From the NCBI GenBank assembly GCA_002269645.1, contig NIVC01000317.1, positions 372,001-436,000 of the forward strand: a stretch of DNA of 64,000 bases. Reading direction: 5' to 3'. The stretch's first letter is position 1. The number at the start of each line of letters is the position of its first letter. The notes beneath the pieces are model-generated. The model saw nothing but the letters and a program-made list of their open reading frames with translations. It had not been told where the DNA came from and ran no database searches. The position numbers were made by a program, and so were the translations under genes. The stretch comes from Macrostomum lignano. Lineage: Eukaryota. Of the stretch, positions 26,341 to 28,708 are shown piece after piece.

Positions 26341-28708
26341 CTAGAGGATCCGGTATTTCTGCCCGCTGCTGCCGCTCCCGCTGAGCACCTTCTGCTGGCG
26401 GCTTCTCAGTTTAGCCAGAGCCATCGTGAGCAGCAGAACAAGCAACAGTACGATGCAGGCCATCGCGCACACAGCCGCCAACATCACCCAGTTGTACAGG
26501 GACAGCAGCAGCTCTTTGTCCGACTTGGCATGGCCGGCGCTACCGCAAGGCTGTCGGGTGGTTAATGGTGGCTTAAAAACTTTGGCTTCTGTTAGATAAG
26601 CTGCTTACAGATTATGGCTGCGATACAGGTAGGTGCAGCCATGCAGTACGTGTCTAACAGGTGGAACCATATTCCAGAGGGTGACACACACTGTCTAACA
26701 GGTGGAACCATATTCCAGAGGGTGACACACACTGTCTAACAGGTGAAACCATATTCCAGAGGGTGACACACACTGTCTAACAGGTGGAACCATATTCCAG
26801 AGGGTGACACACACTGTCTAACAGGTGGAACCATATTCCAGAGGGTGACACACACTGTCTAACAGGTGGAACCATATTCCAGAGGGTGACACACACTGTC
26901 TAACAGGTGGAACCATATTCCAGAGGGTGACACACACTGTCTAACAGGTGGAACCATATTCCAGAGGGTGACGCACTGTCTACTAAGTTGGAAATAACAG
27001 CAAATGGTTTAATTAACTGAAGCACTGAACAGCTGAACAGCCAATAATAGCTCGTAGCAACTGCAATACCAAACCAATTGCCCCAGTCAGCATCACCTGG
27101 TCGTGGATCACGGCCGCTTTAAACAGTCTGTGAAGTCCGACGAGGCCGATGCAAGCGATGCCGCCTCCCCGGTGATACTGCGTCTCTGCCCGGTTCATGT
27201 CGCCGATGCACGTGTGCGGCTTGGCATCAGTCTGGGCAGTCACGCACCACTTCGAATGGTCCTTTGTAGACTTAAACTGCGTCTGGTTCCCGATGCGAAC
27301 ATCGAGCACTTTGGTGACATTGTAGCGCCTGTTGCATGTCGAATTCAGCAGCTCTTTGCCGTGCTGCCAGGTTTCTACCTGCGTAAAACACAAAACGCAA
27401 AACTACCGATTACATGTAAAACAAAAAATTTACTAAAAATTTTGTAAAACTGCACTTCTTCTTTTGTAGAAGTATTGAAGTATAGAAGTATCTAAAAAAC
27501 ACATTTTTTTACAAATCAGTACAAAATATCTGATAATTCTGTACGTGCAGCCACGGAAGAATTAGGACACTATACAGTTGGTTTCTTAGAAATGAACCGG
27601 AAGGAACATATATTTGTAGTATCACTGGTGTATTTACTACTCTAGAGCTGAATGGGGTTTGGCCATAGACTAATTCAGTCGAGAAAAGTCCGCTTTTTCT
27701 ATAATAACATTCAAATGCGCTAGCGATCCTGCTAATCCGCTGGATTCCCTACCTGCCTTAAGATCATTTCTAAGAAAATCGAGTGCAACTGTCCTTTTAC
27801 TGCAATTTTCGATGCGTGCAACTCAGATCCGGAGTAAAGTGAGGTTTGGCCTTTATTTAATTTTCTATACATGTGAAACGCGAGATTCACGTCATTATAC
27901 AACGGGTCATTTCCAGTGATCCCACTGGATGTGATCCCACAGAAGCAATATACCTGAATGTTCGACTGAAGCTGACCAGCCAACAGGTAAGAATACAGGT
28001 CCTGCTTCAGGTGCGGAGACTTGGCCAGGTGCATCACGGACAGGCCACCGGAGGTCACCAGCTTGACAGTGGAATTCATCAAAGCCTTCGGTGGCTGCTT
28101 CCGTTTCTTCAGATCTGCCCAGCTGGGCCAGGCGGCCTCGGCGGCGGGGCTGACGCTGAGGCTGTAGAGGTCCGGGTGCGAGACGAACAGCTGGCTGCCG
28201 ATGATGTTGGCCATCTTTGCGCTGTCCACGGTCAGGCAAAGGAAGCTCTGGCCGTATTTCATCCCAGTGTCCGGGTACTCGTAGCGATGCAGGCTCATGT
28301 TCGGGAACTTTGGCACGCTGTGGATCAGCCAGAAGCCTTTCTGGCCAGACTTCAAAGCGACGAGCCCTTTCATGTGGCCGAACGCGCTGCTGCCGATGCT
28401 GCTGCTGTTGTTGTCCTCTGGCGGCTCGTCGTTGTACGCGGCCAGAACATCGGCGGCGGCATTGGAGCCGGCCTGCAGGACCTGGCTGACGGTGCTGAAC
28501 ACGGGCCATCCCGGGTGATGTCGCAGCCATCCGGCTGAATCCAGGCGGTTGACGAATTCGAGCTGACGTAGGCGTAGTGTCCGGAGTGCGGCTGCTTCAG
28601 CAGAGCGAACCAGTCCAGAGGAAAGCCATCGGCATCCAAGCACTGGAACTCGGCTGATGCAGCATGAACCAGCCAGGCTGATAGCGATAAAACAAATTTG
28701 TAGTTCAT
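26341..28708 (-). CDS. DNASE2: Deoxyribonuclease II family protein with signal peptide, C-terminal TM helix and YxxPhi tail (3 exons, ~415 aa; one 1-bp frameshift near 28503)
   Basis: Exons 28708-27954, 27378-27097, 26550-26341. Signal MNYKFVLSLSAWLVHAASA; DNase II motifs CLDADGFPLDWF, AYNDEPP, GHMKG, GFWLIHSVPKFP, YGQSFLC, HLAKS, ETWQ, KDHSKWC, CIGDMNR...RGGG..C, terminal PC. Exon 3 adds WVMLAAVCAMACIVLLLVLLLTMALA then KLRSRQQK...QKYRIL*. Exon 1 is 755 nt (3n+2); one extra C in a C3 run restores DGPVFST. Confidence 0.88.
26651..26980. repeat. 41-bp minisatellite, DNase II intron 2
   Basis: Tandem TGTCTAACAGGTGGAACCATATTCCAGAGGGTGACACACAC. Confidence 0.95.

What the first reader, a model, noticed from the sequence alone, without database searches (positions are those of the whole stretch)
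26341..27100. DNase II with a type-I membrane anchor and a terminal YxxPhi lysosomal-sorting motif
After the conserved terminal PC of the DNase II fold, exon 3 (26550-26341, not in the ORF track) encodes a ~26-aa hydrophobic helix, a basic stop-transfer segment (KLRSRQQK) and ends QKYRIL*. The luminal domain has several N-x-S/T sequons and both catalytic His motifs (GHMK, DHSK). Established knowledge: vertebrate DNase II is a soluble lysosomal enzyme, while LAMPs and lysosomal acid phosphatase use cytosolic YxxPhi motifs bound by AP adaptors. Inference: a membrane-tethered DNase II sorted independently of mannose-6-phosphate, or a cell-surface/phagosomal nuclease.
Basis: partly seen in the sequence, partly recalled or inferred. 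Interest (0 to 1): 0.75.

Follow-up and report, generated by a model that had tools for sequence, protein, structure and literature searches.

The report
Membrane-anchored DNase II in a flatworm
This flatworm (Macrostomum lignano) gene encodes an ordinary acid DNase (DNase II) that carries an unusual extra tail, a membrane-spanning helix plus a short cytosolic end finishing in a tyrosine sorting-type motif; the protein is already in public databases, but the membrane anchor has not been described and is very rare in the family.

Summary
The window is Macrostomum lignano DNA (GCA_002269645.1, contig NIVC01000317.1). On the minus strand lies a three-exon DNase II gene: 28708-27954, 27378-27097 and 26550-26341. 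Exon 3 joins in frame through GT..AG introns. It supplies the family-invariant Cys348, then a 26-residue transmembrane helix and a 23-residue basic cytosolic tail ending in YRIL.

- **Exon 3 is coding:** its GC3 of 0.81 matches the other exons, and GC falls to 0.36 right after the stop.
- **Already annotated:** the RNA-seq-guided public gene models of all three near-identical genomic copies include the tail (415-aa proteins).
the window copy has a 1-nt frameshift in exon 1 (CCC versus CCCC), so its deposited protein is 5'-truncated. This is probably an assembly indel.
- **Rarity:** among 285 family members with complete C-termini, only three others, from protists or unknown sources, have a TM plus cytosolic tail. 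Their tails are unrelated and none ends in YxxPhi. No named animal sequence has one.
- **Not testable here:** no close orthologue exists in the databases, so conservation of the tail could not be assessed. The YxxPhi motif alone is weak evidence, and its spacing is endocytic-type rather than LAMP-type.

Best reading: a type I membrane-anchored acid DNase routed to endo/phagolysosomes, analogous to lysosomal acid phosphatase. It is a new variant of a known kind, of moderate interest.

The parts
27954..28708 (-). Exon 1 (755 nt in this copy, 756 nt in the paralogous loci). Encodes Met1, the signal-peptide-like segment (28708-28652, MNYKFVLSLSAWLVHAASA|EF) and the first half of the DNase II domain, including GH112MK (28379-28368).
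   Evidence: AF2 helix 3-16.
28503..28505 (-). Frameshift site: the C-run is CCC here and CCCC in loci L001/L002. The reading frame changes after ..DITRDG.
   Evidence: Alignment. Exon length 755 versus 756. The deposited protein of this copy (PAA85587.1, 303 aa) starts only at ATG 28373.
27379..27953 (-). Intron 1 (GT..AG), GC 0.37.
27097..27378 (-). Exon 2 (282 nt, residues 253-346). Encodes Cys267, DH293SK (27261-27250), Cys309 and Cys328, and ends ..VIHDQ.
26551..27096 (-). Intron 2 (GTGATG..GACAG). If retained, the ORF ends at stop 27015-27013 after VMLTGAIGLVLQLLRAIIGCSAVQCFS.
26651..26976 (.). 41-bp minisatellite inside intron 2. It has 8 copies here and roughly 32-34 in the two paralogous loci.
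26341..26550 (-). Exon 3 (207 nt coding plus TAG), residues 347-415.
   Evidence: Coding-type GC3 of 0.81. It is the end of the deposited CDS.
26491..26550 (-). Pro347-Cys348 (Cys codon 26547-26545; conserved end of the DNase II domain) plus the luminal stalk GSAGHAKSDKELLLSLYN.
   Evidence: Cys348 is invariant in alignments A2 and A3. pLDDT is below 50 at residues 353-355.
26413..26490 (-). Transmembrane helix WVMLAAVCAMACIVLLLVLLLTMALA (residues 367-392).
   Evidence: KD19 of 3.16 and Hessa sum of -5.4. AF2 helix 357-403 with pLDDT 85-97.
26344..26412 (-). Cytosolic tail KLRSRQQKVLSGSGSSGQKYRIL (23 aa, net +5). The stop-transfer segment KLRSRQQK is followed by a Gly/Ser linker.
   Evidence: Disordered in the AF2 model.
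26344..26355 (-). C-terminal Y412-R-I-L, matching YxxPhi. The Tyr is residue 20 of the tail.
   Evidence: Function is inferred, not shown.
26000..26005 (-). AATAAA, a candidate poly(A) signal about 340 nt after the stop. An ATTAAA also lies at 26273.
   Evidence: pattern only.

Best explanation
The locus is one of three near-identical copies of the Macrostomum lignano DNase II gene (Mlig011103). Its product is a type I membrane glycoprotein. A cleavable signal peptide directs it into the ER. A complete, catalytically competent DNase II domain (residues ~20-348, two HxK motifs, conserved cysteines, 7 sequon sites) faces the lumen. A short flexible stalk follows, then a 26-residue transmembrane helix and a 23-residue basic cytosolic tail ending in YRIL. 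Shown: the gene structure, the domain, the TM segment and its orientation signals, and use of exon 3 in the deposited transcript-based models. Inferred: the long TM suits post-Golgi membranes, and the exposed C-terminal YxxPhi on a Gly/Ser linker is bound by clathrin-adaptor mu subunits. The enzyme would then be delivered, probably at least partly via the plasma membrane and endocytosis, to acidic endosomes, lysosomes or phagolysosomes. There DNase II is active and degrades ingested or engulfed DNA. The luminal domain may be clipped off at the stalk there, as happens with lysosomal acid phosphatase and PLD3. The tail is a lineage-specific extension of the terminal exon, not a family feature. 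The frameshift in this copy is most likely a homopolymer error of the PacBio-based assembly.
For: The DNase II domain is full length (Pfam E 2.3e-84), and 5i3e is the top hit by sequence and by fold. H112, K114, D292, H293, K295, C309, C328 and C348 are invariant and C267 nearly so. Exon 3 supplies Cys348, whereas the intron-retention product would lack it. Exon 3 has GC3 of 0.81 and GC collapses after the stop. The deposited proteins PAA94095.1, PAA85566.1, PAA85587.1 and UniProt A0A1I8GCS4 all carry the tail. The Mlig_3_7 annotation is built from RNA-seq and de novo transcripts with TransDecoder ORFs (PMC5730564). AF2 gives a confident domain, a low-confidence stalk, a confident long helix and a disordered tail. 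The protein A0A1I8GCS4 is 100% identical to the window's conceptual translation (the same R and A variants that distinguish it from the other two copies) but intact, which favours an assembly indel. Analogy: PLD3 is made as a membrane protein and released in acidic compartments (PMC12684396). An engineered NUC-1::LMP-1 TM fusion in C. elegans retained part of the DNase II activity (PMC4613723). Lysosomal acid phosphatase as a type I precursor with a Tyr signal is my own knowledge (Peters et al. 1990).
Against: No orthologue close enough to test conservation of the TM or YRIL was found. The best non-self hits are 33-39% identical and end shortly after the conserved Cys. The three M. lignano copies are too similar (4 substitutions in 1247 coding nt) to show selection. 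YxxPhi has a substantial chance expectation. Its context (Lys before Tyr, 19 residues from the membrane) differs from classical lysosomal GYxxPhi signals. The three other TM-bearing DNase II proteins found have no YxxPhi in their tails. I did not see RNA-seq reads myself, so junction usage relative to intron retention is unknown. Localisation, glycosylation, cleavage and activity are all untested.
Confidence: 0.55

Rival explanations
1. Cell-surface or gut-facing ecto-nuclease. The membrane anchor holds the DNase on the plasma membrane (for example of gastrodermal phagocytes), where it meets extracellular or ingested DNA and enters phagosomes passively with the membrane. YRIL only sets turnover or is irrelevant.
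For: The 26-residue TM is of plasma-membrane length (TM-length rule from Sharpe et al. 2010, my own knowledge). The Tyr is far from the membrane, as in endocytic rather than lysosomal signals. Membrane-tethered surface DNases exist in another family (GPI-anchored DNase1L1, my own knowledge). Several DNase II homologues end in GPI-signal-like hydrophobic tails (P0006, P0190, CRN-7-like P0156).
Against: DNase II enzymes work at acid pH without cations (established knowledge), so a neutral cell surface is a poor workplace unless the gut lumen or phagosome is acidic. A C-terminal YxxPhi on a flexible linker is expected to drive internalisation.
Confidence: 0.22
2. The tail is a young, lineage-specific C-terminal extension with no dedicated sorting role. 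The TM is a transient anchor, or is simply tolerated, and YRIL is a chance match. Lysosomal delivery uses whatever route other M. lignano hydrolases use.
For: The tail has no detectable relative anywhere. It is absent from all other animal homologues sampled. The chance of a YxxPhi somewhere in such a tail is about 16%.
Against: Exon 3 has strong codon bias (GC3 0.81) through to the stop. The architecture is textbook: stalk, 26-aa helix, basic stop-transfer segment, flexible linker, terminal motif. The motif sits at the exact C-terminus (about 0.9% by chance).
Confidence: 0.15
3. Gene-model artefact. Exon 3 is not part of the main mRNA, and the real product ends in the exon-2 read-through (…HDQVMLTG…CFS*).
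For: I did not inspect reads. The acceptor has only a modest polypyrimidine tract.
Against: The read-through product lacks the invariant Cys348. Intron 2 has non-coding composition (GC 0.47) and a copy-number-variable minisatellite. All transcript-guided deposited models use exon 3.
Confidence: 0.04
4. This particular copy (Mlig011103.g2) is a real pseudogene. The 1-nt deletion in exon 1 is genuine, and only copies g1 and g3 make enzyme.
For: CCC versus CCCC. The assembly was Pilon-polished with Illumina DNA and RNA reads, which should have removed most homopolymer errors (PMC5730564). The genome carries extensive recent duplication, so redundant copies can decay.
Against: An intact protein with exactly this copy's distinguishing residues exists in UniProt (A0A1I8GCS4). 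There are no other disabling changes: exon 1 is otherwise identical to the other copies, and 3 of the 4 exon-2 differences are silent. Polishing is unreliable in near-identical duplicated regions.
Confidence: 0.25

Closest known systems
DNase II / DNase II alpha (Pfam PF03265; human DNASE2, C. elegans NUC-1/CRN-6/CRN-7, Burkholderia thailandensis DNase II PDB 5i3e/5unb)
   Same: Full-length domain, signal peptide, two HxK catalytic motifs, conserved cysteines including the C-terminal Pro-Cys, N-glycosylation sequons and the predicted fold.
   Different: Known members are soluble and end a few residues after the conserved Cys. This one continues for 67 residues into a stalk, a TM helix and a cytosolic tail. 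Identity to any non-Macrostomum member is only 33-39%.
Lysosomal acid phosphatase (ACP2/LAP)
   Same: Works like it, by inference. It is a soluble-type lysosomal hydrolase made as a type I membrane precursor, with a short cytosolic tail carrying a YxxPhi signal, routed through the endocytic pathway and then released by proteolysis (my own knowledge; ACP2 is listed as a lysosomal phosphatase in PMC12684396).
   Different: The catalytic domain is unrelated and the tails share no sequence. The LAP tyrosine is about 8-9 residues from the membrane, against 19 here. Cleavage of the flatworm protein is untested.
PLD3/PLD4 lysosomal 5' exonucleases
   Same: They belong to the same PLD superfamily. They are lysosomal nucleases synthesised as N-glycosylated single-pass membrane proteins and processed to a soluble luminal domain in acidic compartments (PMC12684396).
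   Different: They are type II (N-terminal anchor) and are sorted by ubiquitination into intraluminal vesicles, not by a C-terminal tyrosine motif.
LAMP-1/LAMP-2/CD63-type C-terminal GYxxPhi lysosomal signals
   Same: A YxxPhi at the extreme C-terminus of a short cytosolic tail of a heavily glycosylated single-pass protein.
   Different: The classical signals have Gly before Tyr and lie 6-9 residues from the membrane (my own knowledge). Here Lys precedes Tyr and the spacing is 19 residues, closer to TGN38- or transferrin-receptor-type signals.
Other TM-bearing DNase II homologues found here: P0093 (Hemimastix kukwesjijk), P0104 (EukProt transcriptome), P0192 (JGI contig)
   Same: DNase II domain followed by a single C-terminal TM and a cytosolic tail.
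   Different: The tails are unrelated in sequence and length, and none ends in or contains a canonical YxxPhi. They come from protists or unknown sources, so they are independent acquisitions.

Membership tests
DNase II (PF03265, PLD superfamily) | Full-length match to the family profile | tested here: met
   Pfam DNase_II at E 2.3e-84, 283.8 bits (cut-off 23), residues 22-349 matching profile positions 1-326 of 326.
DNase II (PF03265, PLD superfamily) | Two catalytic HxK motifs | tested here: met
   H112/K114 and D292/H293/K295 fall in invariant columns of the 36- and 21-sequence alignments.
DNase II (PF03265, PLD superfamily) | Conserved cysteines, including the C-terminal Pro-Cys | tested here: met
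   C309, C328 and C348 are invariant and C267 at least 90% conserved. Disulfide pairing itself was not tested.
DNase II (PF03265, PLD superfamily) | DNase II fold | tested here: met
   AF2 pLDDT 89.3 and pTM 0.81. Foldseek top hit 5i3e_A at E 6.6e-22, TM-score 0.74 normalised to the target, followed by PLD-superfamily folds.
DNase II (PF03265, PLD superfamily) | Cation-independent acid endonuclease activity | not testable with these tools
   Needs an enzyme assay.
Type I membrane protein with tyrosine-based (YxxPhi) endolysosomal sorting signal | N-terminal signal peptide plus a single C-terminal TM with the positive side cytosolic | tested here: met
   The N-terminus MNYKFVLSLSAWLVHAASA|EF was read by eye (AxA), with no predictor run. 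TM 367-392 has KD 3.16 and Hessa sum -5.4. Charge is +4 after the helix and 0 before it. AF2 helix 357-403.
Type I membrane protein with tyrosine-based (YxxPhi) endolysosomal sorting signal | YxxPhi in the cytosolic tail | tested here: met
   Y412-R-I-L415 at the C-terminus. Chance expectation is about 0.9% at that exact place and about 16% anywhere in the tail.
Type I membrane protein with tyrosine-based (YxxPhi) endolysosomal sorting signal | Lysosome-type context: Gly before Tyr, 6-9 residues from the membrane | tested here: not met
   Lys precedes the Tyr, which is residue 20 of the tail. The criterion itself is from my own knowledge of the literature.
Type I membrane protein with tyrosine-based (YxxPhi) endolysosomal sorting signal | Motif conserved in orthologues | tested here: inconclusive
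   No orthologue above 39% identity was found in 5.8e9 and 1.84e9-sequence libraries. A tail-only search found nothing.
Type I membrane protein with tyrosine-based (YxxPhi) endolysosomal sorting signal | Binding to AP mu subunits, with Tyr-dependent localisation | not testable with these tools
   Needs experiments.
GPI-anchored protein | Hydrophobic segment at the extreme C-terminus with no hydrophilic cytosolic tail | tested here: not met
   A 23-residue basic, hydrophilic tail follows the hydrophobic segment.
Membrane-bound precursor of a soluble lysosomal hydrolase (LAP/PLD3 type) | Proteolytic release of the luminal domain in acidic compartments | not testable with these tools
   The only hint is an 18-residue stalk with low pLDDT at residues 353-355.

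The most novel reading that the evidence does not exclude
Macrostomum has turned its DNase II into a true type I membrane protein that carries its own tyrosine-based sorting signal. On this reading, an acid DNase reaches phago/lysosomes as a membrane-bound enzyme or precursor, independently of any mannose-6-phosphate-type receptor. This would be the only such case among the animal DNase II sequences sampled. It would be convergent with lysosomal acid phosphatase, with PLD3/4, and with independently anchored DNase II proteins of protists such as Hemimastix.
Probability: 0.45. Interest if true: 0.5.

Novelty: new variant of a known kind. Interest (0 to 1): 0.38.

Why it matters
How invertebrates deliver soluble lysosomal hydrolases is poorly defined. 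A review notes that mannose-6-phosphate receptors are 'not well defined in invertebrates' (PMC9109462). A natural DNase II that carries its own membrane anchor and adaptor motif would be a simple receptor-independent solution. It would also be a second example, after acid phosphatase, of the membrane-precursor route for a type I luminal hydrolase. M. lignano has transgenesis and RNAi, so the idea is directly testable.

Tried and rejected
1. **First full-length search.** The full-length protein with X at the frameshift returned only 47 hits. Low-complexity words of the TM and Gly/Ser tail apparently crowded the 8000-candidate list. It was redone with a domain-only profile (481 hits), which still found no flatworm or tail-bearing animal homologue among the 120 listed.

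2. **Tail-only search.** Seven candidates were collected and none scored, so it gives no clue to the origin of the tail.

3. **HMMER search of 1.84e9 representatives.** It gave 2258 family hits, but only the best 150 are visible. More distant or unlisted members, including possible flatworm ones, could not be screened.

4. **Selection test on the three copies.** This was rejected as powerless: there are 4 differences in 1247 coding nt, against about 0.6% divergence in the flanks.

5. **GPI-anchor reading.** Rejected because of the 23-residue basic tail.

6. **Luminal 'DKELLL'.** It matches [DE]xxxL[LI], but it lies on the luminal side of the TM and so cannot be an adaptor signal.

7. **Literature searches.** Searches for a natural TM-anchored DNase II, for Mlig011103, and for Macrostomum plus deoxyribonuclease found nothing relevant. 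The only hit was an engineered NUC-1::LMP-1 TM fusion in C. elegans.

8. **M6P machinery in M. lignano.** Its presence was not tested, because no suitable tool or query from the window was available.

9. **'Plancitoxin-1-like' names.** Many homologues carry this automatic database name. These are names for DNase II homologues, and nothing here suggests a toxin. I did not retrieve or print the starfish entries.
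Full report
**Identity of the window.** A search with the conceptual protein returned a 100% identical, 415-aa entry named 'Deoxyribonuclease II, Macrostomum lignano' (UniProt A0A1I8GCS4). It sits in a cluster of four: PAA94095.1 (Mlig011103g1), PAA85587.1 (g2, 303 aa) and PAA85566.1 (g3). The g2 locus on contig NIVC01000317.1 of GCA_002269645.1 is base-for-base the window. Its deposited CDS runs from window 28373 to 26341. The window is therefore flatworm nuclear DNA, and the finding concerns copy g2 of a triplicated gene.

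**Gene structure.** The minus strand carries three exons: exon 1 at 28708-27954, exon 2 at 27378-27097 and exon 3 at 26550-26341. Both introns are GT..AG.
- If intron 2 were retained, the protein would end ..HDQVMLTGAIGLVLQLLRAIIGCSAVQCFS* at 27015-27013.
- Intron 2 holds a 41-bp minisatellite (26651-26976) with 8 copies here and about 32-34 in the other two loci. This accounts for the 1-kb size difference of the gene.

**Evidence that exon 3 is real coding sequence.** Four lines agree.
1. Its second codon is Cys348. This column is invariant in a 36-sequence alignment and in a 21-sequence alignment of the family. Its presumed disulfide partner Cys267 is at least 90% conserved. The retention product lacks this Cys.
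2. Exon 3 has GC 0.605 and GC3 0.81, like exons 1-2 (GC 0.57-0.59, GC3 0.73-0.84). The stalk, TM and tail parts are each 0.59-0.62. GC falls to 0.355 directly after the stop, and the introns are 0.37-0.47. The other two frames of exon 3 contain stops.
3. The Mlig_3_7 annotation was produced from RNA-seq (StringTie/TACO) and a de novo transcriptome, with TransDecoder ORFs (PMC5730564). All three deposited models end at this stop.
4. The encoded features are organised rather than random, as described under 'The tail' below.

I did not see reads, so the relative use of the junction remains to be measured.

**The enzyme part.**
- Pfam DNase_II matches residues 22-349 over the whole profile (E 2.3e-84).
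- The only solved relative, Burkholderia thailandensis DNase II (5i3e/5unb), is the top hit by sequence (E 5.4e-26). It is also the top hit by fold for an AlphaFold model with pLDDT 89.3 (E 6.6e-22, TM-score 0.74 normalised to the target).
- H112-x-K114 and D292-H293-x-K295 lie in invariant columns.
- Seven N-glycosylation sites (eight overlapping sequon matches) lie in the luminal part.
- The N-terminus (MNYKFVLSLSAWLVHAASA|EF) looks like a cleavable signal peptide by eye.

Nothing about the catalytic domain is unusual.

**The tail.**
- After Pro-Cys comes an 18-residue stalk (GSAGHAKSDKELLLSLYN), with pLDDT below 50 at residues 353-355.
- A 26-residue hydrophobic segment follows at 367-392. 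Its KD19 is 3.16 and its Hessa sum is -5.4 kcal/mol, against +6.9 for the next-best window.
- The final 23 residues are basic: KLRSRQQKVLSGSGSSGQKYRIL.
- Charge is +4 just after the helix and 0 before it.
- AlphaFold draws one confident helix at 357-403 projecting from the domain, with a disordered end.

Together with the signal peptide this gives type I topology, with the DNase luminal or extracellular. A GPI signal is excluded by the hydrophilic tail.

**The YxxPhi motif.**
- YRIL sits at the exact C-terminus behind a Gly/Ser linker, which would make it accessible.
- The prior chance of such a match is about 0.9% at that position and about 16% anywhere in the tail.
- Its context (Lys-Tyr, 19 residues from the membrane) is not that of classical GYxxPhi lysosomal signals, from my own knowledge of the literature. 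It fits endocytic or TGN-recycling signals better.
- I therefore regard 'sorting signal' as likely but unproven, and 'direct lysosomal signal' as less likely than 'endocytic signal that brings the enzyme into the acidic endocytic or phagocytic pathway'.

**Comparative evidence.**
- HMMER against 1.84e9 representatives found 2258 family members. The best non-self hit is 34% identical, and the highest identity among the 150 listed is about 42% over a fragment.
- A domain-only profile search of 5.8e9 proteins gave 481 hits, with no flatworm among the 120 listed.
- I screened the 285 retrieved family members that have a complete C-terminus. Only the M. lignano cluster and three others have a strong TM followed by a cytosolic tail: P0093 (Hemimastix kukwesjijk), P0104 (a EukProt transcriptome) and P0192 (a JGI contig).
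- The tails of those three are unrelated, and none contains a canonical YxxPhi.
- A few others end in a hydrophobic stretch with no tail, like a GPI signal: P0006, P0190 and the Caenorhabditis CRN-7-like P0156.
- P0174 also passed the hydrophobicity cut-off, but it looks like a faulty model.
- A tail-only search found nothing.

Membrane attachment of DNase II is thus rare and has arisen several times. In animals it was seen only here. Conservation of this tail cannot be judged, because no close orthologue is available. The three genomic copies are too alike to be informative.

**The frameshift.**
- Exon 1 is 755 nt here and 756 nt in loci L001 (g1) and L002 (g3). The only difference is CCC versus CCCC at 28505-28503.
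- The annotators consequently gave this copy a 303-aa protein starting at Met113, which lacks the signal peptide and His112.
- UniProt A0A1I8GCS4 has exactly this copy's distinguishing residues (Arg in ..GLHRLFK.., Ala in ..GHAKSD..) but is intact.
- The assembly is PacBio-based, in a genome with 180 Mb of blocks at least 95% identical.
- I therefore favour an assembly indel (about 75%) over a real pseudogene. That A0A1I8GCS4 derives from the earlier ML2 assembly is my inference from its accession series and was not checked.

**Mechanism proposed.**
1. The signal peptide directs the protein into the ER, where it is N-glycosylated and forms its disulfides, including Cys267-Cys348.
2. It passes through the Golgi into post-Golgi membranes. 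The long TM suits these.
3. Adaptors recognise YRIL, either at the TGN or, more likely, at the plasma membrane.
4. The protein reaches acidic endosomes and phagolysosomes, where the DNase cleaves DNA. It may then be released by cleavage in the stalk.

The first step's inputs (signal peptide, sequons, cysteines, TM) are shown at the sequence level. The later steps are inferred by analogy with lysosomal acid phosphatase (own knowledge) and PLD3 (PMC12684396). An engineered TM-anchored NUC-1 in C. elegans retained part of the DNase II activity (PMC4613723), so anchoring is compatible with function.

**Literature.** Full-text searches found no description of a natural membrane-anchored DNase II, and nothing on this gene in Macrostomum.

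**Verdict.** The finding is a new variant of a known kind, already present but unremarked in public annotation. Interest is moderate.

Noticed in passing
window 28503-28505 (minus strand, exon 1): A 1-nt shorter C-run (CCC versus CCCC in the two paralogous loci) frameshifts this copy. Its deposited protein PAA85587.1 therefore starts at Met113 (ATG 28373) and lacks the signal peptide and the first catalytic His. An intact protein with this copy's variants exists in UniProt, so this is probably an assembly indel.
   Followed up: partly
window 26651-26976 (intron 2); L001 ~5740-7057; L002 ~5740-7139: A 41-bp minisatellite (98% matches) with 8 copies in the window and roughly 32-34 copies in the other two gene copies. 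This is a large copy-number difference between otherwise 98-99% identical loci.
   Followed up: partly
window 29236-29308 (+): tRNA-Lys (anticodon CTT) about 530 bp upstream of the DNase II start codon, in divergent orientation.
   Followed up: no
window 27013-27096 (minus strand): Retention of intron 2 would replace the Pro-Cys/TM/tail with a 27-residue, mostly hydrophobic C-terminus (VMLTGAIGLVLQLLRAIIGCSAVQCFS*). Whether such an isoform exists is unknown.
   Followed up: no
window 30288-30807: Overlapping ORFs on both strands made of simple repeats (GAPIHVLG-type units, poly-Ala and poly-Arg/Gln runs). This is a repetitive GC-rich tract, not obviously a gene.
   Followed up: no
window 1818-2750 (+): ORF with a reverse-transcriptase domain (RVT_1, E 4.3e-17), a retroelement fragment near the window start.
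   Followed up: no
window 49819-50505 (-): ORF with a GDNF/GAS1 domain match (PF02351, E 2.5e-07), possibly an exon of a GAS1/GFR-alpha-like gene.
   Followed up: no
window 36227-39406 (-): A very long uninterrupted ORF (1060 aa) with no Pfam match at E <= 0.001. Not examined further.
   Followed up: no
window 18288-23474 (+): The annotated neighbouring gene encodes a PCI-domain protein (258 aa). The same neighbour is seen next to copy g1 (L001).
   Followed up: no
proteins P0093, P0104, P0192; P0006, P0190, P0156: Three DNase II homologues have their own, unrelated C-terminal TM plus cytosolic tail: one from the protist Hemimastix and two from sources of unknown organism (a EukProt transcriptome and a JGI contig). 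Several others, including Caenorhabditis CRN-7-like proteins, end in a GPI-signal-like hydrophobic stretch. Membrane attachment seems to have arisen repeatedly in this family.
   Followed up: partly
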